Assembly (NCBI GenBank): GCA_963924565.1
Contig: OZ004613.1
Span: 13,268,001 to 13,332,000 of the forward strand
Origin: Ascidiella aspersa
Taxonomy: Eukaryota
Length of the DNA stretch: 64,000 bases
Reading direction: 5' to 3'
Shown here: positions 12,476-59,354 of the stretch, in pieces
Numbering within the stretch: the first letter of the stretch is position 1
How the letters are laid out: every line of letters starts with the position of its first letter
The notes under the pieces: generated by a model
Seen by the model: the letters and a program-made list of their open reading frames with translations, nothing else
What the model was told of the DNA's origin: nothing
The model's database searches: none
Program-made: the position numbers and the translations under genes

Positions 12476-15400
12476 CTAAAACGAGACGTTGTAGCACCTT
12501 TCAAGAGTGTTCAGGTCAACCGTGAGTGGCTTGATCTTATTTAAGATTTGTTTAGGCGGAGGGCATGGTGGTGGCGTTAATCTGAAAATAAAAATTAGAG
12601 TAAAACTTTGTTAGGTCAAGGTACAAAGACGATCACTTGAGTTAACCATGTCAATCAATAATTATTTTTGTATTTAGGATTTGTATACCGGGATGATATA
12701 GAAGTTATTCTGATGAGTTGATTTATTCATTTGCCAACAAAACGAAAAATTATTTTGGGTAAAATCAGAAATAAGAACTAAAGGCTTCTTACATATTTCC
12801 TAACAAAAAGCACAAATAAATGTTACCCGTTGATCCTGTATTGATTTTCGCAAGGATTGAAAGCTTTGTTGTACTTAGTGCATGGACAAGAACATGTAAA
12901 ATGATTGGTTGGACACGTCGGAATCTGAATAGTTGAAACCACAAAGACGTTTAATCAATTATTCGTAGCCTACATATAAATTAGTCGTATATGTTCTCCA
13001 AAAATATGCGATGTTCAATTGTTATTGCATAATACAGTTTGCAGAAAAAAATTTGCTGCCGTTCTAAAGAACACTTACAAATGAATTGTGCCTGCAATAG
13101 CAGTCTGGAGTCATAAAGTTAGAGCACAGCTTAGAAGTTTTGTCCACCATAATGAGAAGTGCATTAGTGCCTTTTACGGGTTTAACTTCGAAATGAAAGC
13201 ACTCTGGGTAAAACGTTCGGCCACTGAACGAGCTTTGATTGGCAGAAATCTTGAATAAAATAAACAGAAGTTTATTGAAGACCCATGGGTATAAAATGCT
13301 AAAAAACTACAAAAAACTAAGTCCTTTTAAAATGGTTCAGTATGCAATAGTTTGGGTTGCTAAGCTGAACAGCCTTTGCATACTTCTAAAAATATGATTA
13401 ACACTGTTTACCGTGAAGGTTTTTTGAATGAAACCTTTCTCAATATTAGAGCATTGAGCCGGCTTCAAAATGTTGGCGGCGAATAAGGCGGCGGCCAGGT
13501 TTTTGTCCTCTGCAGCGATATGTCTGTTAAATGCTGTTTCAGGAGCTTTCAGGAAAGAAGGCGAAGCAATCACGAATCCGGAGTGATCAATCACCAAACA
13601 ACTGCGGCGTTATTAATATGGACTCAAAGTTACATGTTAAAGTTATGATTTGACGAGAATGAAGGACTGTACTTACGAGTATCGGCTTGTGTCGTTGCAA
13701 AATGGATAGAGCTCGGTAAGGATTTCAAAGAAGTATGACGTCACAATTTCAACTCCCATAGCGCCAAACATCTTATTCTTAACTGGATCTCGGATACCAC
13801 CAGGGCTATTTTCATCGGTTGTATACATACATGAACGAAAAACTGATCAAAACTTTTTCACGTATTTTTGCTTTAGATTTAGTGGTTGTTTGTTGTTTTC
13901 AGAATTCGTTTCTATACCTTTTGTCGCGGCAACCAAGATACTAAGCATAACTTTAACAGCAATACTTGACGGCCAAATTTGTCTGGACTTTAGTAAGTAA
14001 GGTCAAAGTAAGCAAAACACAAAGTATATAACAGAATAATCGATTTGGAATTTAATTAATATATTATGTACTGCCTACTAAATTTTCTCAAATTCAGAGA
14101 ATTTTGTTCAGAACCAATAAGAATATGACTCCTGTTGGTGACCAACACTGGTTTAGAAAATTTATACGATTTAACTCAATTCTATGATTGGGCATTCAAC
14201 AGTTGATGTGTAATATTCGTATATAGAGTGCCTTTCTTAAGAGTCCTTGTGTTAAAAAAATTGTGTGCAAGTACTGTAATTTGCGTTATACTTATTTACC
14301 TTCCTTCGAGAAGAGCTCTGCAAAAAGACATCACACTCAGTCCGCTCAACGCGTCACGGTACGGTGGCGTCATGACGTACTTGTCACGGTTTGCCTGCGT
14401 AGTTTCGTACCTGTATTTAAAAGATATGAAGCTGAATTTAGATAATAATTTCCTCTTACAAAACCAGTCGCGTTCAATTTCTCTTTCAGAATTGTAACTG
14501 TTTACTAAATATTTCTTAGTAATTCAGATAGATGAAGATATAATGTTTTAAGCCTAATATTAAAACACAGGCAAATAGTCCAATTCGACATAGCATAACT
14601 TAAAACTATAAGAAATCAGGATCGTTTGGCATAGAATAAATCAATAAAATGTACTGATGTTTCAACCCACCAAGATCGCGTGGTTGGGTGAAAATTGTTC
14701 GGCAACCGAGTCGGAGCATATGTTTGATAAAGTGGGCTTGGGTGTAATCTCAACGTTCACAGTAAATTAATAAGTGTACTTTGACAAGCAAACTTGCAAC
14801 AAAGTGACACTTGTAAATATTGTTTAGACTTTCCTCAAATTAAGAGACTGTTGATGCCTTATTTTGAGGCCAAATATATTTCTCTTTTAAATGATTAGAA
14901 CTTAATAATGACTGACTTAGACCAAGACAGAAAAGTCTGAAGAAGATTGGCTCCCGTATAAAGTCAATGTCACCATTTACATGTACGGGCAGAAGATTTC
15001 TTTATTTTTTACACATTTAGTTTTTCACAATGACACTTTGTTTTCTAAAAGTCTTTAGATTATTGGAGAAAATTACGCCTTCTCACCAGGATCGCATGGT
15101 TGGATCAAAATTGCTCGGCAACTGAGTTCCCGGAAAGATGCGCATTACGCCTTTCTTTGTCGCTATGTATCTCCAGAAGACGTTTTCAGTCAAATCGTTA
15201 TGTTCGACCTTCTTCCAAAGTTCCTCCGCTTTAAGAGTTGCAACAACTTCGTTTTTTACGCCAACCTGACAAGAGACAATTTATCAAGAGCATCCTATGT
15301 AATAAATAATAGTATAACAGCGTTAATAGCCCTCTGACGAAAAGTATTTATGACGGGTTAACCACTAACTTGGCCAAAAACTGTGATATAAACTAAATAT

Positions 15401-18400
15401 TTCATTTTACCTTTAAAAAAGTATCTAAAAAATAAAAACACTCCATACCTTTAACACGGTTTTTGTTGTTTTTCCTTCAAAGTAACTTGTTATTTGTCTT
15501 ACGTCATTCACGGTCTCAGGAACAGAAATATATTGCTCAGGGTCTTTGAAGGCCCTCGCTGCCAGAGCAACTGAACTTCTATCTATGAACAGAGAGAAAA
15601 CTAAAAAACGTTTACATAACCCCATCCAAGTTATGTGCCCTATCATTATTTTAAAATAGTTTTTTCAAGTACGGAAATTTGGTTTTGTATGTTAGACCAA
15701 TGGCTAAACATCCAAGAAGCAAACCTAAAAAGTAATTTCAGTAAATAAATAATGGGGTACTTTGCTTTTGCTAATGATGACTGTATTTAAGTTATCCAGA
15801 GCTGTGAGAATAAATTCGTTTTTTACATATTTGGAAACAAAACATCGAAGTTTATGCCAAACGCGCAGTATTTCTACAACGGAGTAAACAACATTTCACT
15901 GTATAGACGAATTAGGTAGAAAGCATTCTTCTGATCCCAACGTCTCTCGATATATTCGCAATTAGTTTATGTTGGTCATTGAACGAACTTTTTGAGCACA
16001 AAGTCTTTCCATGAAAACACAATTGCTTAGGATGAACCAGATCAAGTCGATGATATAGAAAGGAATCTGAGGGAAGAGAGCCGAGATTTTGAAGCAAGAC
16101 TTGTTGATCGTTGTCAGCCAAAACCAGGCAAAGCGAAAATTCAGTTCCCGGAATCTTAAAACATAATTAGGATTACATAATTTTTTTGATTTTTTTTTCT
16201 TTACTTCGTCAACATGAAGAAAAAGTGATATAAATCACGGCCGAAAAACGAAAAGACTGGAAATTGTTGAATTTGTACACGATCTTGTTTTGGTCAATTT
16301 TGCCGTAGTTTATAATCAACGCTAAAAATACGTTATCGGATTGAACGTTACGTATTTTAATACAGTAAATAAAACACTTTCGAACCCAAACAGAAAGATT
16401 TACAAACCTGTTTCCAGTAGTAGGTGGATTGCACTCGAACCTTCCTCACCGGATAATTTGTGCTGTCGCCTTGGGGAAGTATTCGGGTGGACATGAAGGT
16501 TTTGCTCCCCGATTCACCCCTAAAATAAAGTTTAATTTATAATCGAATTAAACATTTAAAGGGCTTTGCTTTGAAGTATTTAGTTTGAAAATTTGACTGC
16601 GATAAAATAACTTGAGAAAAACAATTAAGTAAACGAAATAGTTAATCATGTACCGTTTCATTGAAGCATAAACAGAAAGGAATTGCGGATCCGACTCAAA
16701 TGCGGTTACGTCGACAAACAATGGTTCGCTTGTGATCACCGTGGAAAATAGAGGGTGAGCAATTAATAAACCTGAAATTTAAAGCCACAGAACATACTGA
16801 AAATTTGTGTCACCTGTTTAATCTTTTATCTTAGACTAATATTTTATGCTATTTACTATAAAGATTTTTTAATTCAGATGGAGTTTAAATTCTTTGTCTA
16901 TGCTATAGTTTACACAGTAGGATCGAGAAAATATACCCTCTAAAAGTTTTTACTTTAAGGTAGGTAATCTGTGACAACATATTCTTTATATGTTAAGGTT
17001 CTGTAGAAATTGACATGCCGGTAAGCATCTAGCTATTACATCTGGTAGAATTTATCTCCATATGCTGTAATGTACAGTTCACCTTTTTGATTGATAACGA
17101 AAGAGTAGGAGAGTTCAGTTGGCCTAAAAAAGATTGATTCGGACAACATTTCCTCGATGCCTATATCAACTGCAGCAACTCCTACTAGTCTATTTGTATA
17201 AACCGGTAAAGCTGCCGTGATCACGGTACCTGGTAAAAAATGGATTATCCACTATCCGGTTAACAATTAACACGTGAATTAAACGAATAACAGCTATTTA
17301 CTATCGCATTTGCTTAGTTTTACATTGCATTACTCCGCACGAAATCTACTCAACAATGGGTAAGCAGATTCGTGCGGTAGATTTTTTTTTAGTTTTATTC
17401 TGTAACACCCCTGCACGAAAATTTTTGTATAACAGAAGTTTCACAAAATTATAAAGCAAATCTACCACCTTGTCCCCAGCCATCTAAATAAGGCACTGTC
17501 CAAACAGGCTCCGCAAAGCCTTGTCCTTCAACTGAATAGAAATTGTAATATGATCCCATTTGATTTCGCAAATTTGAAGGCGTTCGAATGCCTGTGAAGA
17601 TCCCCTTCTGTAGGAGTTTTCAAATAAAATCGTTGAACTCCCAAAGTTTTGGATAAATATAATTAATAAACATTTTAATTTTAAAATGCAAATAAAGGCC
17701 AAAATAGACGAACAACTTTTTGATAAAATTATTTTTTCACACACGTTGTTTTTTTAATTTGTTTTTAACAACACAAACTAGATGAAGCAATAGTATGACA
17801 AGATATTTTAAGTAAACTGCCCAAAAAGTATAGCGTTCGGAAGACCAATTTTATTATTTATTAGAAAACAAAAATGTAAAGAACATATCGATTTTGAAAG
17901 AGAACGGTCGTTGCTAAAATTAGGAAAAATAGGTGGTTTACGTCAAAAATACCACATTTTGGCATTTAGAACTATTAAAACTGATAAGGTAACAGCGAAC
18001 ACTTTAAATATCAGTAAAAAATAAATCCACAAAAAATGTAGCTTTAAATATAATAACAATCTTTAAGTTCTGGACGTAACTTTATTGGAGGAACAAATCG
18101 ATACACTCCCACTTTGAGAATTTTGTTAAGTTTTAGGTTCAGCAGACGTTTGGGGTTGTGGTATTAGGCTACGTAATAATGAATTTAATTATCCCACGTT
18201 AGTATTCTTTGCCATGATTTATCTTTACTAGTTTGTTTTATCGCTATAGTTTGATCGGACAATCGACTACAAATAAGCTAATTAAGCGCTTTAAGCTGTA
18301 ATTTGCTTTTGTACCAAAACAGTGCTGGGTTATGTTAATTTTCTGTATAACTTTATATATTATCCTGTTTGTACTATATTCGCCTTAGTATATGTATTTC

Positions 18401-21400
18401 CTTATCCTTAATTTTTTCGAAGTCGGCTAACACAAAAATTGTTCTCACCAGATGTAGGTTTTGTTGTACCATAGCCTGTTTAACACGTTAAACATTTTGT
18501 CAGGCGACAGAATCGTTTTCTGTATAAGTCTTACCTTGTGTTCGGGACCAACCTCTGCTTCTGTCATTCGCGCCATATTATACAAAATGGTCGGATCTGA
18601 AAAAGAATGGGAGTATGGCACTGTTATCTTCCATTAGGCACTGATTTTAAATAAGCAGTTTCCACACGGTTGATATTTAAAACACATTAAGAGTTTTGCC
18701 TTATGGTATGTGTAGGCGTAGCCACAATTTACCAAACAGGATTTATTAAAGCTCCTTGGGTGCCGTTTTCTCATTTTTATCGTGCCTTTTTAATCGGTTC
18801 TATAGTGCGGTATTTGTGCGGCGGCAGACGACCGGACGGCGGTCGTGTAATAAATGTCATCGCCTTACTGGTCACCCCGAAACTCTTACAAATCACATTT
18901 GTAACAAGGTAAGTAATGCACGTAGATGACGGGATTTAAAAGCTGGTTATTTGAAAATGTTAACATTGGACTGTAAACCGTTGCACGTGGTTACAGCAGG
19001 CCGAAGCAAATTTCTCTCTGAAACGAATAATTTATAATGATACTACTTCGTCGTTTCGGAAAACTTCACAAATAAAATAAAGCTATTTGCTTGTACCACA
19101 GTAGCATTCGTAAAACGATCAACAACATATATCCCCTTCACATATGACGTGCACGATAAAGTCGGCGACCTGAAGTTTTTGAAAAACCTTAGGGCTACAA
19201 TTTTCTTTTTTTTTGCTACAATTTTCTGGTCCACGGAAGTATTGAATTGAGCCAGCGGCGAGATGAATAATAAGGATCTTATTTGTTGACAGCAAATGAA
19301 AGTACCATCTTTGAGGAGCTGCATGATATCCTTATAGCGCAGCACTCAATATTTTTTGGACGCAAATTTTACATTGTCACTAGTATGGACACATCGTCAC
19401 AAGCGCCTTCAGGGTTGAACACAATAACAAATGGTAAAACACATTAATAAATCTGAAACGCAACAGTGACATACTAATAGAGTTTTTCAGACTTGCAGTC
19501 CAAAATTTACTGGAAGCACACTTTGACATGTGGAGCACCACATACTAAAATCTGAACTTTGCAATATGTTTGATATGAAAATCAGTTGGCGTTCTTCAAG
19601 CTGTTGATCGTCATTACATTCATCTGGTGGACGGGGCCTTTGTAAGGATTTTCGTCGACTTAAATCCTTCCCAGAACCCAGTATACACGAGATAGCCGGA
19701 TTGGTCATTTGAAGATATTTATGCGCTTTTGTCTGGTGGAAATATATTGTCAACAAATAAACTAGTGCTCGGCTATCATCAACTTACAGGGACAAAAAGA
19801 GTTCTAAAAACAGCAATCAAAGCGTCCATCGGTTTTTTGAATTTATAAGCATTTTCGAGCTCAAAATACATTTCAGCGACTCATGAATACGGTTTGGGAA
19901 GACCTTATATTCGTCGTCTTTTATATTGATATAATAATAGTGACTAGCTCGTCTATCCTAATACACAGAAAATTTGCAACAACTGTTTCTCCGTGCAACA
20001 TTAGTTAGTGAATATGGCAAACAAATACATGTTCGGAATTCCATAATTTGACTTTCAAAGACATCAACAAGAAGGAAACAGCATTACTTTCTCTAAGTGT
20101 AAAAATTGTTTATCTAGAAATCTTTGTACGTTGTTCAAGGACTGCACGAATTTGTAATAATGATCATTTTTATCATCGCTTTATATTTTCACATGTCAAC
20201 GTTATGACAACATTTTATGAAGCGCAAACGATTGAAACCCTCCCAAAACACCCTTGCTTGGAGCGCTCCAGTGTAATGCGCATTTTGCAGCCATGCACGC
20301 TCTCGCCAATGCTTTTTCGGTAATAAACCCTCGGGCTAGTTCGGAAGCAGCACTTACAGTGGCTGTACCGAAAATAAGTTATTGGTAGCGTTCTGCAACA
20401 GCATGTTGGTGGAGTTTTAAAACCGAAGAATTTTAGTGGAGTTTTAAAACCGAAGAAATTCAATTCCTGCCATCTTGATGGCCGACATGTTCGGGAACAT
20501 TTCCGAACGGCGTAGGTTTACAGCATTTACCGACCACAAACCTTTAACGCGAAAACGGCATATTTTTACAAATGCCAACTCAAGTACGGATGCAGCCTAC
20601 AGCACATCGCAGAAAGAAAACAAATTTGTGGCAGATGCACTTAGATCTTAATCAAACAATAAATTACATCACATCGACTACGAATCGCGAGCCGCAGCGC
20701 TCCAATACTTAGAGCTTAAAGACGTGTCCGCTCGAAATCCCGGCTCCAAACCAAAGATTATTGGCACTGCAAGATTTTCGACTTATCTGAACTCAAAAGC
20801 GATATTAATACACTTGCAGATATATGCCCCCCGTCCCATGACATGAGCTTTTAAAATCATTGTAACAAAAAATGTAGCAAATGACATTGGGGGTTGCTGA
20901 TACTAATAAAATAACTAAACGAATAAATACTAATAAAAGTTTATTGCTTGGTGTGTGGCAAGTACGACAAAATGTTTCAAAAAAGAATACATGGAAGGTG
21001 ATAAATCTACACATTTATAACCTTTGTATTGTTGTTGTATTACTGAGAGTTGTTTTGTAGGAGAACAACTAATAATGGGAAACAAAGTTGAGAAAAAACA
21101 AATTGTCATACCAAAGCTATTTCCAAGACCGTATGTCAGTATCAGAACTGAATTGTTGGCATTTCTTGTGGTAATGGTGTTGTAAATATCCTGAACCGCA
21201 TTATTTGGTTGGCCGTCCGACATAAACAGTATGACTTTATCCGCTGCGAAAAAGACGTTTTAAACGCAAGAGACTGAAATGTGAAGAATATCTATATTTC
21301 GTATAACAAGATGTCAACAATATTTGCGCTAAAATATTTTAAAAATAAATGTCTTTTAAAAGTAAACTTACCCTTTTTAATGCTTTTGCCAAACTCAAAA

Positions 21401-24400
21401 AAATCGAATGCTGCGTTTAGTGCAACGAGGTAGTTAGTTCCACCTAAAATGTTGTGCAATACAAAGATTTTATCGTCGACAATTCAAAAATCTTTAAACC
21501 AGGCGACACTTATAAATGTAAATTACATTTGGACAGTTACTTTAACCTAATGAAGCAGGGTTGTGTCATGTTTTAAATTGTCTTTAAATAACGCTAGCAG
21601 ATTTACGTTTTATTTAAATAATTTGTTGTACAATATTTCAATTTCCCAGCTATGTTATTTTACTTAATATTAGCCAAACAAGTTATGTGGTAGGCCTACA
21701 CTAAAACGTATACAAATTCTTTAATAAAATGTTTTAGGATCCTTTACCGAAAAGGCTTCTATTGAACAAAACGAACTTTAAAAAATGGGATACGAGCCAC
21801 AAACGAAGGCCCATGTATAAAGTTACTGTGAAGTTCAAATTATCGCATAGCGTTTTACTTTTAAGCAGGGTGAATTTATTATTATCGTTCATGATATGCC
21901 GTGTGTCATGCGAGGAAGAAAATGGTGAATAAAACACATCGAAAATAAATAAGTTCCATTTATACCCACTTGTGTTGGACAATCATGTATTATAAACGCG
22001 AAACAATATGGAAACAATGTCACCGGAAAAAACTAAAGATCTGTTTTTAGTTTGATTAAAACTTACCAATGGCGTATATTGTATCGATATGTTCTTTCAC
22101 CCTTTTTTTGTTTTGTGGGGTGGCCTGGGCGAAGGTCGACTTGAAGCAGGTGCCGTTGGGAATGCGGTTGTCCGTAAACAATGCTGCATTAGTGGAAAAC
22201 GCGACCAATGCAAACTTAAAACAAAGTAAAAAGAATGAAACAAAATTTACGTCTAAGGAGATATTTCGATCAATCCGGAACACTAACGTATTTTTTTATT
22301 AAAGAGTTTCAGTGGTTTTCTTTCTAATTAGGGCAAACTAACTGTACAAACATTATATCTATATAATAAACAAAAGTGTTGTCGTACAAGGCCGTCTTAG
22401 TAACAACGTGTTTTAGCAAAAACTTCACATTAAACCGTACTTCGTCATAAGAGTTGAGGGTGTCAATCACTGTTTTTGTCGCTCTTCTTGCATGCTCCAT
22501 AAACGTTATTCTACCAAACCGCTGGTTCATCGAACCACTCTTATCTAAAACGATCACAACTTGTTTGGGCTTGGGGGCAATGGCCTGCACGTACCAGGAC
22601 CTGAAAGTTGAAGGATAAAATTGTTCTTGTTTTATCTTGAAATATTGTATTTATTCTGCTAATAAGTTAATACTTGCTTGAAGTATATTGTAAAGCAAGT
22701 GGATGTAGGGATCAAATGAAATTAAATTTAAATAAAAAACTAGAGCTCTCCAATCTTTCCAATTATATTAGAAGTAACATTACCAAACTATAAATAACTG
22801 CTAATCACTTACATTCGTTTTGATAAGTTATATATGCTTTTAAGAAAGTGGATGGCAAATAATTGTACGCAACAATTAGCTCTTTCTTTAATTTACCAGT
22901 ATGAACCAAATCGTGGCTCGACGAAGAAATTAAATATTTAGAGAGTATTATATTTGCTCGCGACCGATTACAACGAATTACTGGAAACATTTACAAGTTT
23001 TTCCTACTTTACAATCAAATTGACTGTATATAGGCCTACAAAGAAAAACATGGATCCTTATACCTGAAGCGGTTATCGTAGTTTCCACAATTCGTCACTT
23101 TGGTGGCGGGAAATTGTGTTGTGACGCCCTGCTCACTTCCGAAATACTGCCACTTCATGGAAGGGACGCTGGCTAGATTGTCCATGCAAGCTCTGCTGAA
23201 ACCACTTTGCAATCTAGTGGACGAGCTCGGTGCGTTGGACGAAATCAACTCACAAACTTGAGAAGTCGAAACCTGAAATACAGAATGATGTTGTTCCCAA
23301 ACTACAACTATAGCCTTCGTTGCGACTCACGACTGTCAAGTTTGCTGTAAAAAAAAACGATTTAGACTATTACAAATTATCTTATAACTTTTGAATAATT
23401 TCGATAAATAGAATTACACCTAAAATAACATGGAAAAGTGTTAAAGGAACCCACATATGATATACAGTACAATAGTTTATCTCATTCAAGATCAGGTACT
23501 TACATTTCGTCGAAACTTAGGGTTGTATTCCAGTTTTCCTAAAGGAATTTGGCAACATTGATACTCATCCGATGTCAAACCAGAGAACGATTCCTGTACA
23601 GCTTTTTCCAAATTCCTTAGCGCCTTTGTCAGTCTTTGAAATTTTTTCCTCAATGCGTTACTCATCTTAAATATATTTCCAAGTTAATAAGTTGTTGAAT
23701 ATAGTTGTTGCTCTATGTGAAGTTAACATTACGAAATTGCGCAAACCAAATGTTTAGAAATGATTTAATTATTCCTTTTTTCCAAGAGATATCTGCCAAG
23801 TTTGGCGTTTTGCGCTCGATTTTGGCTTCGCATTAGATGAAGGCGCGTGACCCAACTACTTAAAAAGTACGTCGCTTCGAACAGTTTGTTAAACCGTAAC
23901 AAAAAAGAACAAAAACAATAATATCACTTAAAAAAAGGAGGGTAAGAACCCCTCAACCCTCCCTGGATACGCCACTGGGGGCAATGGATAATATATAAAT
24001 TTTAACCTCCATTGGTAATACATACTACACTTAAAAAATAATACTAATAGTCGCATTTTAAAATTCCAGGGGAGGGAACGAGATCTGCTTATGCTGCTCG
24101 ACTAGACTTGATATACCCTACATAGGTCTCAGGGTTGGATAAAGCCTACTTGATTTGGCATGCACTTACTGTGTCCAGCAATTCAACACCCTGTAAATCA
24201 TAACGACTGTAGTTCAGAGTATCCATATAATCCTGAAAAAATAAAAACATACTAAAGATTTGCGACGCGAATATGACAGATGCAAGGCTGAATCTCTTCA
24301 GGATACACTTACCTTTAAAGCCATGTTTCATTATAAACTTGAACTGTAATGCGTATGCTATTGCAAGCTACAAAAACCTAATCAAGCCAGCCACTGATCG

Positions 24401-24674
24401 CAGGTCTAAGCGTGAAGAAAATATTGAACTGATTTGGCTCACAGAGCATATTTACCTGCCTTTTGTTTTGATGCTTTGAGCAAGCGTACTGATTACTTTA
24501 GTTTCGAAATCAAGTGTAACTTACCTGCATTTCCTTGTACTTCAGCGAACGTTCAGTCAATTCCTTGACCTTGTTAGCTAGCAGATTCGAATCGGCTCGG
24601 GATATTAAGGAGGAAGAACAGACGAATCCACTTAAAAAACAAACTAACAATGTAACTTGCACTTTCCTGATCAT
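12476..24674 (-). CDS. CACHD1-like: Gene A: VWFA and cache domain-containing (CACHD1/alpha2delta-like) protein, ~985 aa, no TM as written (predicted secreted)
   Basis: 22 GT-AG exons in consistent phase: 24674-24525, 24232-24170, 23665-23504, 23272-23064, 22600-22441, 22214-22067, 21443-21372, 21243-21112, 18596-18535, 17607-17469, 17229-17083, 16771-16654, 16519-16408, 16154-15989, 15582-15449, 15265-15087, 14410-14300, 13805-13677, 13601-13412, 13249-13079, 12924-12827, 12581-12476 (2958 nt). Signal peptide MIRKVQVTLLVCFLSGFVCS, WQYFGSEQG, YDNRFRSWY, MIDAS DKSGS..GGT..SDG, PYLDGWG, FDPTMRSWY, CSCPC. Confidence 0.88.
18869..20790 (+). mobile_element. Decayed Ty3/Gypsy LTR-retrotransposon internal region in gene A intron 8 (antisense to A)
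   Basis: Ordered motif relics: HVEHHI (19527-19544), RT-like GGRGLCKDFRRLK (19626-19664), RNase H FTAFTDHKPLT (20517-20549), VADALR (20628-20645). PBS-like TGGTCACCCCGA at 18869, just after an AATAAA. Confidence 0.65.
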
Positions 24675-30600: not shown

Positions 30601-30720
30601 TGGAGCTAGCATTGTTTCGTCTGAGTTGCCGCTTTACGCATGGTTCTAAACACATTTTGTTTTATAGATTTTTTATTTATTTATATTTATTTATTGTTGC
30701 AAAATTCGATTGTCAGACTA
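24675..30720. promoter_or_regulatory. Divergent intergenic region between the start codons of genes A and B
   Basis: Inferred from head-to-head orientation; transcription start sites cannot be seen. GTGGAAAACTACT recurs at ~27656, ~29256 and ~30437. Confidence 0.5.
27927..28212 (+). pseudogene. Older 5' fragment duplicate of gene B (upstream sequence plus exons 1-2)
   Basis: MIARAQVALLICFLTGLASA...EQSLK then TAA at 28062-28064 after a small deletion; exon-2 homolog at 28150-28212; no exon 3 follows. Confidence 0.85.
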
Positions 30721-33700: not shown

Positions 33701-36700
33701 GCATTCGTCCGGGTTAAAGCCTTGAAACACACCATGCATCGTTTGGCAAACAAATTTGAAGATGTATTTTCTAACAAAATATTTGTTTTCCTGATGCAGA
33801 CCGTGGTACGTGCAAGCCAATGTTCCAATACCAAAGCAAGTTGTCATCGTTATAGACCGAAGCGGTTCAATGAGTCAAGAATATAAAGGAGTGTCGTACA
33901 TGAAACTTGCAATAGAAGCTGCGAAAACAGTGATAGACACTTTAAATCCCTATGACAAGGTTTGTTGCAGGATACTGTACATACTTGATTTTTGTGAAAA
34001 TGAATATCATACTTGTGTTAATGTAAAAATACTGTAAAAATAAACAAAACTATTGTATTTTTAATGAATCCTAACTGTTTTTGTTTGTTTCTGGGTTCGT
34101 TGAATGGATGCCAGTCTAAATGTGTCAAATAAACAAACCTAACGTTATTATGCGTTACTTTGAATTCCGATGTATACATTTAAGCCAGATAGCTGAATTT
34201 AATGCTTTAATGAAAACAATTTTTTTAAGTTTGCTTTTATCGCTTTTTCGTCGAGTGCTGAACTCTTCACGGCCAGTAAGATCCCAAACGGCACCTGTTA
34301 CAGAACAAGCTTCGCCCAGGCAACGCCAAAGAACAAAAAGCTCGTTAAAGAGCACATCGACGATATTTATCCAAGCGGTAAACTTCAATGTTGTCCGCAA
34401 ATCATTGGAATTTATTTAACTCTAATTTTTTGTTGTATAAATATGTCTATCGTAACGTTTTATTAAACCTGCAAATTATGTAATGCTGGAAATAGTGTCT
34501 CGTAAACAATATTTACGTTTGATAGACTTTGTCATGCAAATTTAAAACTTTCCTGTATATATTTCAGGTGGAACAGGATTTGTGGCAGCATTGCAAGCAG
34601 CATTCACATTTTTTGATCTGGTCAAAGACGACACTGAAGGTTGGACAATTTAATGGATAATTTACACTATGGTTTTGGCTGTTGACTACACTGGTGACAA
34701 TGTATAGAATTCCACAATTTCCTTCCGGGCAAACTGTTAAAAGAAAGATTGCCTGTAATGGAGGAGTTTCTTCAAATTATCAATAATTTTTCAAATTGTC
34801 CAAAAAAGGATAACAATAATTTTAAGTAATATTGTGCCTGATAACTCTTTGATAAATACTTTAGCAAAACTTTTAAATTTGCCTATAGCTTTTTTTACTT
34901 TTTTGTTAAATAGTTTGATAAAAATCTGGGCTGTGTCCAACATGATTTGTCATGGGACAGAAACAATGCTTTAATATATGCGTTTTTAGATGAATACGAT
35001 AAGAAAATAACCTGAATTTGTCAAGGAACAACACAGTTAAAATAAAGTTAAACGTCTCTCACAAATTTGTTTACGTTTATATAAACAAGTTCGTGTTGAA
35101 ATAAGTGTAAATTAACAACAAAAGTTTTAATATGGTTATCCCTTTCATTCGGGTGACTGATATTCAAAACGTATTTCGTGGTTATAAGTGCAACAAAGGG
35201 AGGGCTTATTGTGCAATGCGTCAAAAAATTCAAATTAACTACTTCCGGATTTTTTTTATTGAAAAAACTTGTGAAACCTAAAATAGATGGTTTATAGAGC
35301 GTACTATTTTTTGATACATCAATTGCTTTTTGTTGTGCCTAATGTGTAGCCTATTATTAAGTTTTTTAGGGATTAGCCTATTCTATAATTCAGGGTTCAT
35401 TATTTTTTCCATAAGTTTCCACCAAATGAAACACCATCCGGAAGTTAACAGAATATGTGCGTTTATTAATTGAAACTAACTGCAAATCCTAATAAACCCA
35501 AACTTTTTTATTAGGCCCTAACACTTAATTAGCAACACAAACAATTATTAAAAAGCCCAAAAAATCAACTGACGGCAATTAACTAAAAATAAAAAAAAAT
35601 TAATGATTTATATGTAACTGTTTATAGCAGTGGTTTGGGGATTTCGTGGTTGAGTTTGGGTTTGGACAATTTCATCATCATTTAAAGAAGATATGGTGTG
35701 CATACGTTAAGTGGTGCAGGATAATTGAAAACAACTGTATTACTAAGTCTGGTAATGAAAAGTACCGTGTTAAAAAATGTTTAAAAAAACGTTCAGTAAA
35801 ATGATTTGTTTACAAAAGCAATAAATACTGAATTACATAGAATAAGAAAAATTTGAGACAGAAACTTCCCTAATTTCGTAAAATATTTTCGCAATGGACC
35901 AGCTTAGGTAACGTGTCATCTAGGATAACCTTCCTCTCAAACTATTCACGATTTTGCTTAATAGCGCAATTTGTTACAGCAGATAAGGTTATGCTGTTCA
36001 TGTCGGACGGGAAACCAAGCGATTCAACAAGCAACATTTACCAAACCATAACCTATAGGAACCGGAACCTTAACAATTCAGTGATTATAATGACGTATGG
36101 TCTTGGATCTGGCGTAGGTTCGTGTTTATTTTTGTTTTCAAACGTGTGGCATAACATCCCCTGTGTTAAATTTTTTACAACCCTCTGAATAAACTTTTGT
36201 TATTTATTTCTTTTATAAGTTAAACGTTTTGAATTTTCTTAATTAAAAGAAAACAAAAGTACGGTATTTTATTTCATCTGTCTTAAATATAGTTAAATTT
36301 TTTTCAGACTCAACAGTTTTGCAGAATATGGCAAAATCCACGGAGATAGAGGTTGGATCCGATAACAAGGTTTGACTATTCCATTGTTTTGATGATAATC
36401 TGTTGAAAGTTTTTTAGCATAATGGATATTTTGTTTCATCTTTGATGTCTGTTATAGCTTGAATTGATGGTGGTAAAAAAAATTCAATAAAGAAATGCAG
36501 GTGACTCCAGCGTAACACGTTAGGTTGCACTATTACTCATTTCGACCACAAGTAAAAATAGAATATATTGTTATTTATAAAAGACCATGGTAGGCTAAAT
36601 TTACTCAAAATAGGATCTGAAACTCTATTAAAAAAAATGAAGGTTTGTTGCATTATTTTCCTAATTTTATATATGTATAGAAAAATTTCATTTATTAAAT

Positions 36701-39700
36701 TTTTTCGATTAGGGTGAATTTAAAACTTTCGTTTCAGTTCCGGTTCGACTAAATTTATTTTCAAAACCGATTAAAAAGTTACGGTTCGGAAACAATAAGA
36801 GTTGCGTTAAACCTAAAAAATCGTTTAATAAATGTAGAGAATGATTGTTTTGAACTGTAACCCGTATTTCATCTAAGTTTCGTGACGTATTAAATGCCAA
36901 ACAGCTCATTATTGAAATATCTCAAAAAAACGTTTTGCTTACTGAAATGAACATATTTTCATTCATTTTTTGCACTGTTGTAACGTATGTCACTTTTTTG
37001 TGAGTTATCTGAGATATAAAGTTTATCTCGAAACACTTTTATGATTTTACATTTATTCAAAAATAATTTACAAGTCTGATAAAATAGAGTTAACGAATAA
37101 AAGTTATCCTATGCTTTTCATTGTACTAATCGCCAAACAACTTTTTATTTAAATACTAATCAAAGAAGGAAAATTCGGACATTGCATTAAACACAAGTTG
37201 TAAGGTCATGCTGGAGTTAACCGCTTTTTAACAAGTTAAAGTTCGGGTTTCTCTAAAACATTGGGTTATTGTTTTGATTTCATTAAATAAAGATGATTTT
37301 AATAACTATTTCTGTGCTATTTGCAGCAAGGCCAATATACAGCAATTTCAACACCTTCGAATTTGCGAAATAAAATGGCGTCATATTACAATTTCTTTTC
37401 AATTCAAGGACAGCGAATTACAAAACCAGTGTGGACAGTACCTTATCTTGATGGCTGGGGTTTAGGTAATGGAATAATGTATTGAAATGTCATACAATTT
37501 TTTTGATTATTAATATTTATCAACCAATATTAGGAAATGTTTTTATTAAATATTTGCATTTTTGTAGACCTGTACTTCATTGTACAGGATAAATCCAGGC
37601 AATTTACTTTATTTATTGGTCTATTTTATTATTGTTTTACCAGGGTTAATGATCACGGCAGCTTTGCCAGTTTATACAAGCAATCTAATAGGAGTTGCCG
37701 CAGTGGACATAACTATCGAAGAGCTGTTGGCCGAATCAAGTTTCTTTAAACCAACTGAACTCTCTTACTCATTTGTTATTAATAAGAAAGGTAATGTATG
37801 CTTATAGTAAGGAAAGATGTTCCTGAGACCTAATGTTTTCGAATTGTTAACTGTTTAGGATTTTACAGTAAATTTGCAGGCCCACCGTACGTAGCTTAAC
37901 AGATTTCATTTTATATCGTCCATAACTCGTTATCGACATTCATGGGTTTCTAAGTTTATCTTGGTGGCATGAGAAGTGCCAAATGACTAATATTGCATTT
38001 TTAACTTATTAGTAAATTCCAAATTCTGAAACACATGTTCCGTTATAGGTTTCAATTTATATTAGTGGAATCCAAAACTAGTGGAATCCAAAAAAGCAGC
38101 GGGTGGCTGTCAGTCAATCACTGCTTAGCTAACATTTATGTAAACATGTAAAAATTAAGTGAAACTGTGTAATATTAAAATATATATTTTAGTAATCACC
38201 TCGGTATTGACAGTTTTGTTTTACGATACATTTATTAGATAAGTATACTTGAATTTTAGGTCTGGTCATCAACCATCCCTTATTTCCCACCGTGACCACG
38301 GGCGAACCATTGTTTGTCGAAGTAACCGCATTTGAGTCGGACCCGCAATTCCTTTCTGTATTTTCATCAATGAAGAGGTAAACGAGTATTAGAGTTTGGT
38401 TAGGAAGCCAATAAAAGTTACGAATGTTTTAATATTTCGAACCTTGCGCTAACCCAGCGCCACAAAACCTTTAATGTCGAATAATTTACCCACAAAAACA
38501 CGAAATGATTTAACCATTATAAATACTATTGAATTATCTCCACTATTATCTGCAACGCGTGTAACTATGTAGGTTTATCAGAAATTATAAAATAGGAACC
38601 GATACCTCATAGCAACAGTGCAAAACCAAAAATACATTGTTGTTGGCTTTTTACCTATTTTGCGCCCAGTTTGGCCTGGTAACGTACAGCTGTCAGAAAA
38701 CAGAATGTGAAAACAAAGATTTATGAAGTTCCAAAGTTTGCCCAATAAAAGATAAAGTTCGTCCAATGAAAGGATATAATAACTGGTAGAAGAAATGAAA
38801 GGCATAACGTCTTGCAAACCTGGGCAATTATCGCCTAGCATTTTTCATACAAGTTATGCTACACTGAGAAGTTTCATTTGGGCCGTAGGCTATATTATAC
38901 ACAATATACTGACGAGTCACCGTTTTGTCAGATCCCATTCATACGTGAACACATTCAAATATATTGAAGGGTCCCTAATTAACCATATTTATAGCCCGGG
39001 ATCCAGCAACAAAAGTTAATTTATCGCAGTTCAATGTTTCACGAAGTTAATTTACCGCAGTTCATTGTTTTAAATTGTACACTCATTCTTTAACAAGGGT
39101 AGAGAAGCTTTGGCTCTCGAGCCATTTAGGGCTCTTTGAATACCGTCATATGGCTCTTATGATAAAGTAATCTTGCTCGCAAATAGATCTGAGCTATCAT
39201 TTATTATCATGGCATGAATAAAACTCCACGCGGCCATGACTCCTTCCAAACTGTATTTTTTTAACAAGTTTAATAACACTTGAATAAAACTCCACGCGAC
39301 CATGAACCCTTTCAAACTATGGGTAATAGCAAAATTTTTCTCGGTCTGTTTTTTCGTGGCTGTTAGCCGATTTGATGAAACTCAGTAACCGAAGTTTTGC
39401 AAACTTAGCCACAGTACTTTTTCGCGTTTACTTTAGAATTAGATGTTGAAATATATAACAAGACTCTCATGGAAATACAACCAAAAATATTCGGCTTTTA
39501 TGGCTTTTTCAATTGAAAAGATTTCCGACCCCTGTTCTACAACATGTTTAATCCTATTCAGCGGCGGGTCAGGTAACAAAACCTTCATGTCCACCCGAAT
39601 ACTTCCCCAAGGCGACAGCACAAATTATCCGGTGAGGAAGGTTCGAGTGCAATCCACATACTACTGGAAACAGGTTTGAAAATCAATAATTTTTGACGGT

Positions 39701-42700
39701 TGCTGTTTCGCCATATATATATATTGCTGCCATTAAATCGTGAAACGTATAACATTTGTAAATCTTCGGGTTTGTAGTTTTTCAGTATCGGTTTAATTCT
39801 ATTTTGGCGTACCGGTACTTGCCTTAAATATTGGGTTTGTTATCGTTGTACAAAATTGTTTACGACTTCCAACGTGGTATTTTGGTTTGCCATGCTGTTG
39901 AATTATTATATCGATGTTTTTAGATTTCAGGAACTGAATTTTCGCTTTGCCTGGTTTTGGCTGACAACGATCAACAAGTCTTGCTTCAAAATCTCGGCTC
40001 TCTTCCCTCAGATTCCTTTCTATATCATCGACTCGACCTGGTTCAACCTAAGCAACAGTGTTATCATGGAAACAACTTTTGCTCAAAGGGTTAGAGTGTT
40101 CAATGCATGTAATGCGGAAATAAGTCAATTATTCCACGCCTGATTCGGCTTAAACATTTTTTCCCACATGGATTTTGTCGAAATTAGTAATAACAAAATG
40201 CATGCTGTTATATCTAATGTAATGTTTAGGACATAAGTATATTTATCATATCAGGGTTAGGTCGAGCATTTATTGGAGTAGTCGCTTATTTACATTAGTA
40301 TAAGATTAACGCACAGCACAATAGATAGTTAGAAACATGTGACTACAGAGCACGTGGCTGAGGGACGGCGGGTAACCTCTCCCAGTAGAACGGCGTGATT
40401 ATGCCATGACTGAAACGAAATATACAGTACGTTCCTGCAATATGGTGCCAAAAGCCAAAATGTTAATAGCTTTTCGGATCTGCCAAAATTTCTCACTGTT
40501 CGCTATGTTATATCCAACATGTATGTCTGCTCCTTAAAACGTCACAATGTGCATTTTATAACGTTTAGGACCTAAGAAAATTTATCGGGCCACAATTAGC
40601 TTTGAAACAAAATAAACAATCTGTTGTTGAGTTTTTCTTCAACTTTTATCATTTTGCTGCAGACCAAAGCTCAGTTGCTCTGGCGGCGAGGGCCTTCAAA
40701 GACCCTGAGCAATATATTTCTGTTCCTGAGACGGTAAATGACGTTACAAAAATGGCAAACTACATGGAGGGAAAGACGAGTAGTACCGTTTTAAAGGTAT
40801 GCGGTTGTCGGTTCGTTTAACTTAGGTACATCGTTATGAAAAGCGTTTAATGCCTATTCCAAATCTATAGCAGCTGTGACCTTTCTCCAATTACTGTCTG
40901 GCTTGCACTCTCAAAGCCTTTTAAAAGGAATAATTTTAAGAATACTTTTTACTCTTACCAAAAAATCAATTTTTTTTCATTAAAACAAAATAGTCTATTT
41001 AGTTTTTATCAATTGTAAAACTAAAATATGTTATTCAATTGGAAAATAATCACTGCATCACTGCATGGAATATAACCTACCCGTTTGGTTTTGTAGATTT
41101 ATATAAGTGAATTATGAAATCACTAATTTTACATGTCAGGCTGGCGTGAAAAATGAGGTGGTGGCCACTTACAAAGCAGAGGAACTTTGGAAGAAGATTG
41201 ATGAGGACGACTTGAGTAAAAACGTCTTCTGGAGATACGTAGCCACAAAGGAAGGCATGATGCGCATCTTTCCGGGGACTCAGTTGCCCAGCAATTTTGA
41301 TCCAACCACGCGATCCTGGTGAGTTAATTCATAGGCTTGATTCTCATCAATAATAATCTAAAGGATTTTAGGAAGCAAGGTGTCAGTGTGGCAAACTGAT
41401 GTGTAAAAAATGAAGATATATTTGCCGCCCGTACACGTAAATGACGACAATGACTTCATAAGGGAGCAAATATTTTCAGACTGTCCTGCCATGGTCTTCG
41501 TTCTAATTAAGAGACGGCGATGATGCCTTATTTTAAGGCGAAATACATATTTCTCTTTTAAATGACTAGATTTTATTAATGACTGACTTTGACCAAGACA
41601 GGAAAGTCTAAATAATATTGGAAAGGTTCACTGTGTTTCAACTTTTGTTTGTCAAAGTAGCCACTTATCAATTTGCTGTGAACGTTGAGATATAACCCAG
41701 CCTATATTATCAAACATATCCTGCTTTATGCCCCCCCGAGTGTTTATCGTTTTAGTCAATAAAAATTATTTCTTTAAATCCAGGTACGAATACACGCTAG
41801 CAAACCGTGACAAGTACGTTGTAACTCCACCGTACCGTGACGCGGCCAGTACACTCAGTGTGATCTCTCTTTGTCGAGCTCTGTTTGAGGGAAGGTAAGC
41901 GAAATGCACCGCGACCCTCACGATAAGCCAAACAATATAATAATGTGTCCCAGTAGCCACAGCTGCTAGTTGATGCAATAAAACGCATTTATAATTCGCG
42001 CCTACTCTTGACAGTTTTACTTTTTTCCTGTTTTGCTATCCTATTTAAAAACAAAAACATTTTTCAGTAGTTTCTTGATAATATAATCTATCCAAATTGT
42101 ACAACATTTTTGGCTGTATTGTTTATTCATGTTGCTGTTTAATAACACATTTACTAAAACTAAAAAACAGACAAGGTGGTGTCCATGATCCAATCAAGGA
42201 TAAGCTGATTGGAGCAATGGGAGTTGACATTGTGACGCCATACTTCATCCAGATTCTCTCACAGCTCTATCCATTCTGCAACGAAACAAGTCGATACTCG
42301 TGAGTGCGATCACTAAAACTTTAACCTTAACTTTTTTATTATTAAACATATTATTTCAAACATTCTTCGTTCGGCAGGTGTTTGGTGATTGATCACTCCG
42401 GATTCGTGATTGCTTCGCCTTCTTTCCTGAAAGCTCCTGAAACAGCATTTAACAGACATATCGCTGCAGAGGACAAAAACCTGGCCGCCGCCTTATTCGC
42501 CGCTAACATTCTGAAGCCGGCTCAATGCTCTAATATTGAAAACGGCCTGATTCAAAAAACCTTTACGGTAAAACGCTCGTATATTAATCAGGGATCTGCT
42601 AAGTATTTTATGTAACACACGGTGACATGGATAATGTGTTTCAACCACAGATCACAGTAAAACGATAGGTTGATATTCATTTCGAACTAAAAATAATTGA

Positions 42701-45700: not shown

Positions 45701-46288
45701 TTATAAATCCACTTTCCAACTTTTTTTTGTTGTACCAGTGTATACCGGTATATCGTCAACAATTTTCAGTAAAACAGTCGTCGCAGGCATTAAATGTTTT
45801 ACTGAACAAAAAAAGATTTCTTACTGTTTCTATTTTTCAAAATAATCCATTCGTTTAACAATATCCCAAGTGATCATTTTAATGGCCTAATTTCATAACC
45901 TGTTATAGGTGCAATACCTTAAAATACGAGGTTATGAGAAGCTTAAGTTTTAATGGCGCATGCTATTTTTGAAGAATTTCGTCAGAATCAAGCCTGGTTG
46001 TCACTTCTTTATTTTTAGGATCTTAGTGCAGGGGAACAACTTTATTAGTCAAGAATTGTTAAATTTTTTTTCAGTATTTGATCTTGAATTAAATTGCCAC
46101 AGGCTCCAGCAACGATCCACACAGCTCCGGCACCAGCGGCCAACACAAACTACGGATACGCGTCTTCGCCGAGTGCACCCCCACAACCTCCCCCTACCAA
46201 CCCTTATTACACGGCCGATAAAGCACCACCTGGGCAATTCCCCCCGAGCTATTCCGCGTCAGTTGGCTACAACAACCATCCAATGTAG
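30721..46288 (+). CDS. CACHD1-like: Gene B: VWFA and cache domain-containing (CACHD1-like) type I membrane protein, ~1101 aa
   Basis: 23 GT-AG exons: 30721-30870, 31038-31100, 32717-32878, 33273-33481, 33800-33959, 34230-34377, 34568-34639, 35980-36117, 36308-36369, 37327-37465, 37644-37790, 38260-38377, 39562-39673, 39924-40089, 40663-40796, 41140-41318, 41784-41894, 42171-42299, 42378-42567, 42797-42973, 43086-43186, 43851-44103, 46103-46288 (3306 nt). Same intron phases as A. MIDAS DRSGS..GGT..SDG; TM ITIIVVCVVVGLILLAIIFMCC followed by RKWK; Pro/Tyr-rich tail. Confidence 0.9.
44231..45351. mobile_element. hAT-like MITE with a second decayed hAT-like element inside (~44490-45010), gene B last intron
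   Basis: GTTTCCCAACCTTTT ... GTTGGGAACCTCTG termini; inner GCGGGCCGC / GAGGGCCGTAGATTGGCGACCCCT ends; no clear TSD. Confidence 0.55.
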
Positions 46289-59260: not shown

Positions 59261-59354
59261 GTTTGTTGTAGGATACTGTACATACTTGATTTTTGTGTAA
59301 ATGAATATCATACTTGTGTTAATGTAAAAATACAGAAGCACGCATAAACAAAGC

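What the first reader, a model, noticed from the sequence alone, without database searches (positions are those of the whole stretch)
13412..42567. Exon-confined near-identical patches between otherwise diverged inverted paralogs (mosaic gene conversion)
Seen (hand counts): exon 4 first 175 nt with 2 mismatches (23272-23098 vs 33273-33447); exon 13 last ~96 nt with 1 mismatch; exon 14 with 104 nt identical; exon 15 ~62 nt with 1 mismatch; exon 19 ~125 nt identical. Synonymous sites are included. By contrast exon 3 is only 24/54 aa identical, and intron 13, between two homogenised exons, does not align. Inference: repeated short-tract ectopic conversion, favoured by the inverted geometry or templated by spliced cDNA, homogenises Cache-scaffold exons while VWA exons stay distinct. 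This gives a constant/variable mosaic.
Basis: partly seen in the sequence, partly recalled or inferred. Interest (0 to 1): 0.75.

Follow-up and report, generated by a model that had tools for sequence, protein, structure and literature searches.

The report
Short gene-conversion patches between old paralogs
Two old, head-to-head copies of a sea-squirt membrane-protein gene share five short, almost identical stretches inside exons, best explained by one copy repeatedly overwriting bits of the other, which is a known process seen here in unusually small, sharp patches.

Summary
Gene A (minus strand) and gene B (plus strand) are CACHD1-like (VWA_N/VWA/Cache) paralogs. They are 77% identical over 2745 aligned coding bases, synonymous sites are saturated in many exons, and most introns do not align. 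Five tracts of 62-175 nt in exons 4, 13, 14, 15 and 19 carry only 4 mismatches in 563 nt, all at third codon positions.

- **Chance:** no permutation reached such runs.
- **Constraint:** the patch codons are no better conserved than other codons in Phallusia, Ciona and Clavelina relatives or in two paralogs on another chromosome.
- **Polishing artefact:** raw reads and contigs of other individuals argue against it, for four of the five patches.

Best explanation: recent interlocus gene conversion at the DNA level, confined to islands where homology survives, on top of an older tract covering exon 16 and intron 16.

The spliced-cDNA idea is not supported, and inverted geometry is not required, because a tandem pair on another chromosome has a similar patch.

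This is a clean new example of known mosaic concerted evolution. The scan noted exon-restricted conversion elsewhere in this genome.

The parts
12479..24674 (-). Gene A, CACHD1-like. In-frame exon pieces E1 (24674-24525) to E22 (12580-12479), all open.
   Evidence: Exon-by-exon tblastn of A against B and of named relatives P0002 and P0090. No stop codon in any piece. Stranded RNA reads lie on its exons.
30721..43953 (+). Gene B, CACHD1-like, head-to-head with A. In-frame exon pieces E1 (30721-30870) to E22 (43852-43953).
   Evidence: Weak exon-level Pfam matches to VWA_N and VWA_2.
33273..33447 (+). Patch 1 in exon 4 of B, 175 nt with 2 mismatches. It starts at the first exon base and ends 34 nt before the exon end.
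23098..23272 (-). Patch 1 in exon 4 of A.
   Evidence: Not covered by the reads laid.
39577..39673 (+). Patch 2 in exon 13 of B, 97 nt with 1 mismatch. It runs to the exon's last base and about 11 nt into intron 13.
16408..16504 (-). Patch 2 in exon 13 of A.
39930..40033 (+). Patch 3 in exon 14 of B, 104 nt identical. It starts 6 nt inside the exon.
16045..16148 (-). Patch 3 in exon 14 of A.
40671..40732 (+). Patch 4 in exon 15 of B, 62 nt with 1 mismatch (40685). The third copy B' has the A letter at that site.
15513..15574 (-). Patch 4 in exon 15 of A.
42379..42503 (+). Patch 5 in exon 19 of B, 125 nt identical. It starts at the second exon base.
13476..13600 (-). Patch 5 in exon 19 of A.
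   Evidence: Contig depth in run X2 is about 3 times that of the flanks here. There is one in-patch variant, at 13523, in other individuals.
41134..41722 (+). Older tract in B covering exon 16 and most of intron 16, about 75-84% identical to A 15271-14715.
   Evidence: blastn HSP. Intron score z = 84. 341 of 419 ungapped intron columns are identical.
14715..15271 (-). Older tract in A covering exon 16 and intron 16.
18549..46988 (.). Unit 1 of a tandem segmental duplication of about 28.4 kb. It holds the 5' part of A (from within exon 9) and all of B.
   Evidence: megablast blocks at 93-99% identity.
46988..64000 (.). Unit 2 of the same duplication, which runs on to about 12.5 kb beyond the window. 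It holds the fragment A' (no exons 4-6) and the third copy B', with exon-4 patch copies at 58574-58748 and 62691-62865.

Best explanation
A and B are old duplicates of a CACHD1-like gene lying head-to-head about 6 kb apart. Most of their length has diverged to saturation. Short stretches have recently been copied from one gene into the other by non-allelic (interlocus) gene conversion acting on genomic DNA.

Inferred, not shown:
- Pairing between the two genes can now form only where purifying selection has kept exon sequence alike, because most introns have lost all similarity.
- Tracts therefore lie inside exons and tend to stop at exon edges.
- Stretches that stay nearly identical remain substrates for further conversion, while the rest has escaped.

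An older event of the same kind covered exon 16 and intron 16. The third copy B' takes part in the same pool of near-identical sequence.
For: **Patches against the rest of the gene.**
- Patches have 4 mismatches in 563 nt, all at third codon positions.
- The synonymous difference is 0.05 per site in patch codons and 0.61 in the others.
- Per-exon dS is saturated in E1, E5, E6 and E20-22. It is 0.8-1.0 in E3 and E10-12, and 0.5-0.74 in E15-18.
- Permutations: 0 of 2000 and 0 of 5000 on third positions alone reach the observed runs.

**No special constraint on the patches.**
- In patch codons A-B identity is 0.99. B to Phallusia, Ciona, Clavelina, C1a and C1b is 0.59, 0.55, 0.53, 0.62 and 0.56.
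- Those values are no higher than in non-patch codons.
- Third-base identity among conserved residues is 0.49 and 0.40 in patches against 0.43 and 0.39 outside (C1b and C1a).

**Discordant history along the gene.**
- In E3-E12, B is as close or closer to the Phallusia protein (0.69) and to C1b (0.66) as to A (0.63).
- In non-patch E13-E22, A-B is the closest pair (0.71 against 0.62).
- Quartets (A with B: B with Phallusia: A with Phallusia) are 8:0:0 in patches but 2:2:2 and 4:4:1 in E5-E12.

**Conversion at the DNA level.**
- The exon-13 tract extends about 11 nt into the intron, with an atypical donor that A, B and B' share and C1a does not.
- Intron 16 is about 80% identical.

**Reality in reads.**
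- Raw DNA reads of another individual include reads that carry B's own intron sequence joined to the patch.
- Among the rows shown, the only alternative letter inside a patch is at 13523.
- Contig depth in run X2 is about 3 times the flanks in the patches.

**Generality and print.**
- The tandem pair C1a/C1b has a like patch in exon 11.
- Mosaic conversion and the impeding role of diverged introns are described in print (PMC2720389 and PMC3966223, passages read).
Against: - No rise in GC3 in the patches (0.50 against 0.46-0.48). Such a rise often accompanies long-term conversion.
- Exon flanks at 70-80% identity and tracts of 62-175 nt are poor substrates by what is known of homology requirements.
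- Why tract ends hug exon edges is only inferred. The combined p is 0.019 and post hoc; 6 of 7 tracts sit at the acceptor edge, p = 0.125.
- No orthologous DNA could be compared.
- Read depth was only about 5-8x, and 50 rows of the variant table were not shown.
- The exon-4 patch was not covered by reads.
- Variants in other individuals give no independent sign of ongoing conversion.
Confidence: 0.8

Rival explanations
1. The patches were copied from a spliced cDNA, or directly from RNA, of the paralog. That would explain why introns between them do not align.
For: - The exon-13 patch reaches the last exon base and the exon-14 patch starts 6 nt into the next exon. In spliced register they are nearly contiguous, while intron 13 does not align.
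- Gene A is transcribed.
Against: - Four of the five junction-abutting tract ends do not continue into the neighbouring exon. The ends of E3, E14 and E18 are diverged.
- Two mismatches (39927, 39929) sit exactly between the E13 and E14 patches.
- About 11 nt of intron 13, with an atypical donor, is shared.
- The older tract contains intron 16.
- All intron positions are kept in both genes.
Confidence: 0.05
2. The identity reflects strong selection on the nucleotide sequence itself (an RNA element, splicing code or overlapping gene) in both copies, with no copying between them.
For: The patches lie in exons and abut splice sites.
Against: - Patch codons are not better conserved than others in three ascidian relatives or two in-genome paralogs, at either protein level or third positions.
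- B and B' differ at 2 sites within the patches (33353, 40685).
- Another individual carries a variant inside patch 5 (13523).
- No Rfam family matches in the region.
- The C1 pair has its patch in a different exon.
Confidence: 0.03
3. This is an assembly or polishing artefact: reads of one paralog were mis-mapped onto the other and overwrote true differences.
For: - Short reads of B do lay on A's patches (loose ends at 13605, 16164 and 16397), so cross-mapping is possible.
- The locus holds near-identical duplications.
Against: - Polishing can only erase differences where copies are already nearly identical. It cannot create the step from about 70-80% to 99-100% within an exon.
- Raw reads of a different individual show no well-supported alternative letters in the E13, E14 and E15 patches and only one in E19, among the rows shown.
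- Contigs of two other samples carry the same patch sequence.
Confidence: 0.04
4. Reciprocal exchange rather than conversion: crossovers between the inverted copies, which would flip the 10-29 kb between them, or double crossovers, have shuffled segments and left identical junction stretches.
For: - Inverted near-identical stretches of 100-175 nt are possible substrates.
- The 5' and 3' halves of the genes have different histories.
Against: - A single crossover leaves no short identical island bounded by divergence on both sides within one exon.
- No strand-changing joints were reported in the region laid, though depth was low and only A's 3' half was laid.
Confidence: 0.05

Closest known systems
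Mosaic concerted evolution of mammalian gene pairs BMP8A/B, DDX19A/B and TUBG1/2 (PMC2720389; abstract and passages read)
   Same: - Old, linked duplicates in which only some segments are kept homogeneous by gene conversion while the rest diverges.
- Detected by paralog similarity exceeding ortholog similarity and by run tests of the GENECONV type.
   Different: - Those tracts span exons and introns and show raised GC. At least one similar intron was a selection criterion of that study.
- Here the young tracts are 62-175 nt and lie within exons. Most flanking introns are unalignable, and GC3 is not raised.
'Merohomogenization' of paired leukocyte receptors KLRC, KLRI, KLRB, KLRA and PIR (PMC3210942; abstract read)
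   Same: Homogenisation restricted to the part of the genes that encodes one domain while other parts stay distinct. That is a constant/variable mosaic between partners.
   Different: - There the homogenised part is a defined ligand-binding domain and a functional rationale is proposed.
- Here the patches are fractions of five exons spread over VWA_N and the region between and within the Cache matches. No function was tested.
Gene conversion between adjacent Caenorhabditis paralogs, including inverted hsp16 and hsp70 pairs (review PMC3966223; passages read)
   Same: - Conversion occurs in both direct and inverted adjacent pairs.
- It is usually reported for exons, and diverged introns are said to impede it.
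- Tracts can be very short.
   Different: In nematodes, tracts often include the very short introns. Here most introns (about 80-2800 nt) are excluded, apart from intron 16 in the older tract.

Membership tests
Interlocus gene conversion / mosaic concerted evolution | Paralogs are more alike in the tract than either is to outgroup relatives, and not so outside the tract | tested here: met
   - Patch codons: A-B 0.99 against 0.53-0.62 to five relatives.
- Non-patch E3-E12: A-B 0.63 against B-Phallusia 0.69.
- Quartets 8:0:0 in patches against 2:2:2 and 4:4:1 in E5-E12.
- Protein level only.
Interlocus gene conversion / mosaic concerted evolution | Synonymous sites are homogenised together with replacement sites | tested here: met
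   Synonymous difference 0.05 per site in patch codons against 0.61 elsewhere. 4 mismatches at 186 patch third positions.
Interlocus gene conversion / mosaic concerted evolution | Identical runs longer than permutation of the differences allows | tested here: met
   0 of 2000 permutations and 0 of 5000 on third positions reach the observed runs. GENECONV itself was not run.
Interlocus gene conversion / mosaic concerted evolution | Raised GC or GC3 in converted tracts (a frequent accompaniment, not obligatory) | tested here: not met
   GC3 is 0.495 and 0.50 in patches against 0.475 and 0.458 outside.
Interlocus gene conversion / mosaic concerted evolution | Converted exons group by species and others by gene in nucleotide trees with orthologous loci | not testable with these tools
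No DNA of eukaryotic orthologs could be fetched.
Interlocus gene conversion / mosaic concerted evolution | The identity exists in the organism's DNA, not only in the assembly | tested here: inconclusive
   - Supported for the four patches of gene A that were laid (E13, E14, E15, E19) by raw reads of another individual and by contigs of two samples.
cDNA- or RNA-templated conversion | Tracts continue across exon junctions in spliced register | tested here: not met
   One of five junction-abutting ends continues (E13 to E14), and there 2 mismatches lie in the first 6 nt of E14.
cDNA- or RNA-templated conversion | No intron sequence is co-converted, and introns are sometimes lost | tested here: not met
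   - About 11 nt of intron 13, with a shared atypical donor.
- Intron 16 is about 80% identical.
- All inter-exon intervals are present in both genes.
CACHD1 / alpha2delta-like proteins (the genes themselves) | VWA_N, VWA and Cache domains in this order | tested here: met
   - Exons match in order along named 'VWFA and cache domain-containing protein 1-like' proteins of Clavelina and Phallusia.
- The Clavelina protein has these Pfam domains.
- Single-exon Pfam matches are below the curated cut-offs.
- The joined model was not searched, by rule.
CACHD1 / alpha2delta-like proteins (the genes themselves) | Metal-site motif D-x-S-x-S at the start of the VWA domain (motif recalled, not from a call) | tested here: met
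   The exon 5 translations read D-K-S-G-S in A and D-R-S-G-S in B.

The most novel reading that the evidence does not exclude
The tracts are anchored to splice junctions. Six of seven (five young, one older, one in the C1 pair) begin at or within 8 nt of an exon's acceptor edge and run downstream. This could mean that the copying is coupled to transcription or splicing, for instance break repair guided by the paralog's transcript, rather than ordinary DNA-to-DNA conversion limited by homology. The mosaic might also be kept by selection as a shared 'constant' scaffold next to diverging VWA modules.
Probability: 0.08. Interest if true: 0.75.

Novelty: new member of a known kind. Interest (0 to 1): 0.3.

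Why it matters
- Gene conversion can persist, or recur, in islands of only 60-175 nt between duplicates that are otherwise saturated. Whole-gene identity or dS would misdate such duplicates, and exon-wise trees would conflict.
- This is a clean case for asking what limits conversion tracts when introns have lost all homology.
- Any assembly, read mapping or expression measure at this locus needs care, because three copies share identical stretches.
- The scan's other notes suggest the pattern may be common in this genome.

Tried and rejected
**Signals that gave nothing**
- GC-biased conversion: no GC3 excess in the patches.
- Known RNA families: only a U1 gene far from the finding.
- Third literature search: nothing relevant.
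- 'cachd1' with 'ascidian': one unrelated review. I found no paper on this family's expansion in ascidians in that one search.

**Population signal of ongoing conversion**
- Of the 40 variant rows shown, 10 are exonic. In 5 of these the other individuals carry B's letter.
- I rejected this as evidence. A new mutation on the reference A allele gives the same picture, and 5 of 10 is what that null predicts.
- The variant at 13475 may mean only that the identical run in exon 19 is 132 nt in other individuals.

**Counts I dropped or do not rely on**
- One search's Phallusia counts for E1-E4 are spurious local alignments, because P0090 lacks the N-terminus. E1-E4 were left out for Phallusia.
- One search's ungapped B or A against C1 figures are invalid (one-codon indel). 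Only the C1a/C1b comparison from that call is used.
- Run X1 did not show the 3x depth that X2 shows in the patches. I use the X2 depth as a hint only.
- The exon table leaves out exon 8 and part of exons 20 and 21, which have indels.

**Not done**
- Exons were never joined into a spliced CDS or protein. All searches and counts were exon by exon and summed as numbers.
- No supplements of papers were consulted.


Full report
**What is in the window.** The window has no N and about 35% G+C. It is G000:C7:13268001-13332000 of a 308.6-Mb assembly. Earlier notes of the scan call the animal a sea squirt. This fits my results: the nearest named proteins are 'VWFA and cache domain-containing protein 1-like' (CACHD1-like) proteins of the ascidians Ciona intestinalis, Clavelina lepadiformis and Phallusia mammillata.

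Gene A lies on the minus strand (start codon at 24674, last piece ending at 12479). Gene B lies on the plus strand (30721 to 43953), head-to-head with A. I defined 22 exons in three ways:
- comparing A with B frame by frame;
- reading the splice sites in nucleotide alignments;
- laying the Clavelina and Phallusia proteins on the DNA exon by exon.

Single exons give weak Pfam matches to VWA_N and VWA_2, below the curated cut-offs. The full-length Clavelina relative has VWA_N, VWA and two Cache-type matches. All searches were exon by exon, and all statistics are sums of per-exon counts.

| Exon | B coordinates | Length | Mismatches |
|---|---|---|---|
| 4 | 33273-33447 | 175 nt | 2 |
| 13 | 39577-39673 | 97 nt | 1 |
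| 14 | 39930-40033 | 104 nt | 0 |
| 15 | 40671-40732 | 62 nt | 1 |
| 19 | 42379-42503 | 125 nt | 0 |

- The 4 mismatches in 563 nt are all at third codon positions.
- Over 21 in-frame exon pieces, 627 of 2745 nt differ. Exon 8 and parts of exons 20 and 21 were left out because of indels.
- Exon 3 is 24 of 54 residues identical.
- Shuffling the differences within codon-position classes never gave runs like those seen (0 of 2000; longest shuffled run 54 nt). Nor did shuffling third positions alone (0 of 5000; observed runs of 41, 34, 28, 27 and 27 codons against a shuffled maximum of 30).
- Inside each patch exon the change to the rest of the exon is abrupt, for example 0 of 125 against 8 of 64 mismatches in exon 19 (Fisher p from 1e-6 to 1e-4).

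**Strata of divergence.**
- Per-exon dS is saturated in E1, E5, E6 and E20-22. It is 0.8-1.0 in E3 and E10-12, 0.5-0.74 in E15-18, and 0.15-0.23 for the whole patch exons E4, E13, E14 and E19.
- In patch codons the synonymous difference is 0.05 per site, against 0.61 in the rest.
- I tested 20 inter-exon intervals against shuffles. Only four had a local alignment score that no shuffle reached:
  - E7-E9, which contains exon 8;
  - intron 16 (z = 84);
  - intron 12 (z = 3.7);
  - intron 18 (z = 2.7).
- Intron 13 (z = 0.2) and the introns beside exons 4, 14, 15 and 19 are not alignable, apart from intron 18 just upstream of exon 19.
- Intron 16 is about 80% identical over its first 400 columns (271 of 337 ungapped columns; 341 of 419 in all).
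- So there are at least three ages: an old background, an intermediate tract over exon 16 and intron 16, and the young patches.

**Is it constraint?** I aligned each exon's translation to the Phallusia, Ciona and Clavelina proteins and to two paralogs on contig C1 of the same genome. These are C1a and C1b, found and fetched.
- In patch codons A-B identity is 0.99 (190 codons). B to the five others is 0.53-0.62, no higher than in non-patch codons.
- Among residues conserved between B and C1b or C1a, the third base is the same in 50 of 102 and 46 of 115 patch codons, against 136 of 316 and 125 of 322 elsewhere.
- B and its near-identical copy B' differ at 2 sites inside the patches.
- No Rfam family lies in the region.

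The patches are therefore not unusually constrained stretches of this family.

**Discordant history.**
- In non-patch codons of E3-E12, B is 0.63 identical to A but 0.69 to the Phallusia protein and 0.66 to C1b.
- In non-patch codons of E13-E22, A-B is the closest pair (0.71 against 0.62).
- Informative quartets with Phallusia and Ciona (A with B: B with Phallusia: A with Phallusia) are 8:0:0 in the patches, 2:2:2 in E5-E9, 4:4:1 in E10-E12 and 7:1:1 in E16-E18.
- The counts are small and at protein level. Still, they say that the A/B split is about as old as the split from the Phallusia gene in the 5' half, while the patches differ by 0.7%.
- That 0.7% is about the difference between individuals seen in the reads, and about the difference between B and B' (13 of 2745 exonic nt).

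**Template: DNA, not spliced cDNA.**
- The exon-13 tract runs about 11 nt into intron 13. A, B and B' share an atypical donor beginning GTTTG (10 of 11 bases alike between A and B), whereas C1a has a different donor.
- The older tract includes intron 16.
- Of the five tract ends that abut an exon junction, only the E13/E14 pair continues on the other side, and there two mismatches (39927, 39929) lie between the two patches.
- No intron is missing.

**Tract ends and exon edges.**
- Tract ends do lie closer to exon edges than random placement predicts (Fisher-combined p = 0.019, post hoc).
- Six of seven tracts sit at the acceptor edge (p = 0.125).
- I read this as homology ending at the exon edge. 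That is an inference.

**Inverted geometry is not needed.** C1a and C1b are tandem and on the same strand. Their exon 11 has 10 mismatches in 144 nt, only one of them in the first 81 nt. Their other exons match at 73-77% or not at all by blastn.

**Is it real?** I laid four runs on A's 3' half (window 12450-18440).
- The raw DNA reads (X9, about 5-8x of what was read) come from another individual. They differ from the reference in all reads at many intron sites.
- Reads with loose ends at 13605, 16164 and 16397 carry sequence that I matched by eye to B's introns 18 and 13 as printed. So reads of B join B's own introns to the same patch sequence.
- Among the 40 variant rows shown (50 more were not shown), the only one inside a patch is 13523 (6 of 11 reads in X9, and the contig of X1).
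- At 13475, the first A/B difference after patch 5, X9 (7 of 7 reads) and X1 have B's letter.
- Contig depth in X2 is 183-221 in patch 5 against 63-71 in the flanks, as three copies sharing the stretch would give. X1 does not show this.
- Stranded RNA reads (X10, 30 reads) lie on A's exons in the sense expected for the minus strand. They include a diverged part of exon 14, so A is transcribed. No junction reached the listing threshold.

- The stretch 18549-46988 is duplicated in tandem at 46988 to about 76500 (93-99% identity).
- This gives a fragment A' and a full third copy B'.
  - A' holds the 5' exons of A but lacks 21744-23757, which carries exons 4-6.
  - B' has an internal 4.1-kb tandem repeat (55238-59352 and 59355-63466, 99.7%).
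  - So the exon-4 patch occurs four times in the window.
- The B/B' gene body is more alike (99.1%) than the unit's flanks (96-97%). The whole cluster therefore appears to be recombinationally active.

**Comparison with what is known.**
- Mosaic concerted evolution is described for mammalian pairs (PMC2720389, passages read).
- It has been named merohomogenization for paired leukocyte receptors (PMC3210942, abstract read).
- A review of Caenorhabditis paralogs states that conversion is mostly reported for exons, that diverged introns may impede it, and that it occurs in both orientations (PMC3966223, passages read).
- The present case is a new, sharp example in an ascidian CACHD1-like cluster, not a new kind of process.
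- The scan has a first-reader note of exon-restricted conversion on another piece of this genome (s1-802440), and a follow-up that found patchy conversion in another family (s1-794399). I tested neither.

**Verdict.** Interest is modest. The main open points:
- long reads over every patch;
- why tract ends sit at exon edges.

Noticed in passing
window 46988-64000 and on to about 12.5 kb beyond the window end (L019, L024): A tandem segmental duplication of about 28.4 kb copies the 5' part of A and all of B. The gene body of B/B' is 99.1% identical, while the unit's other parts are 93-97%. This suggests later homogenisation.
   Followed up: partly
window 55238-59352 and 59355-63466: A 4.1-kb internal tandem repeat (99.7%) inside the third copy B' doubles its exons 1-5. 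The effect on the transcript is unknown.
   Followed up: no
window 27644-28336 (+): A diverged relic (74-80%) of B's promoter-proximal region with exon 1- and exon 2-like sequence lies between A and B.
   Followed up: no
window 14658-14732 (-): A partial second copy of the 3' end of exon 16 lies inside A's intron 16. It is 48% identical in translation to B's exon 16 end.
   Followed up: no
window 14835-14950 and 41502-41621: A repeated element sits in intron 16 of both genes. It matches in both orientations, and contig depth there is about 9-10 times the flanks.
   Followed up: no
window 4832-4996 (+), with repeat arms at 3731-4165 and 6286-6734: A U1 snRNA gene (Rfam 91 bits) lies between the arms of a 93-95% inverted repeat.
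   Followed up: no
window 12463: RNA reads and contigs of two samples all leave the reference just before 12463 with the same unlike sequence. The stretch laid began at 12450, so this may be an end effect. It may also be a structural difference next to A's last exon, which bears on the neighbouring note on A's C-terminus.
   Followed up: no
G000:C1:6737000-6770000 (L020-L022, L025, L026): Two further CACHD1-like paralogs lie in tandem on the minus strand. They have one exon-confined high-identity patch, in exon 11.
   Followed up: partly
Clavelina lepadiformis proteins P0002, P0085, P0086: The annotated 'isoforms' share blocks. P0002 and P0085 are identical over residues 1-750. P0002 and P0086 are identical from about residue 754 to the end. 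This looks like module swapping or read-through between tandem paralogs of the same family.
   Followed up: partly
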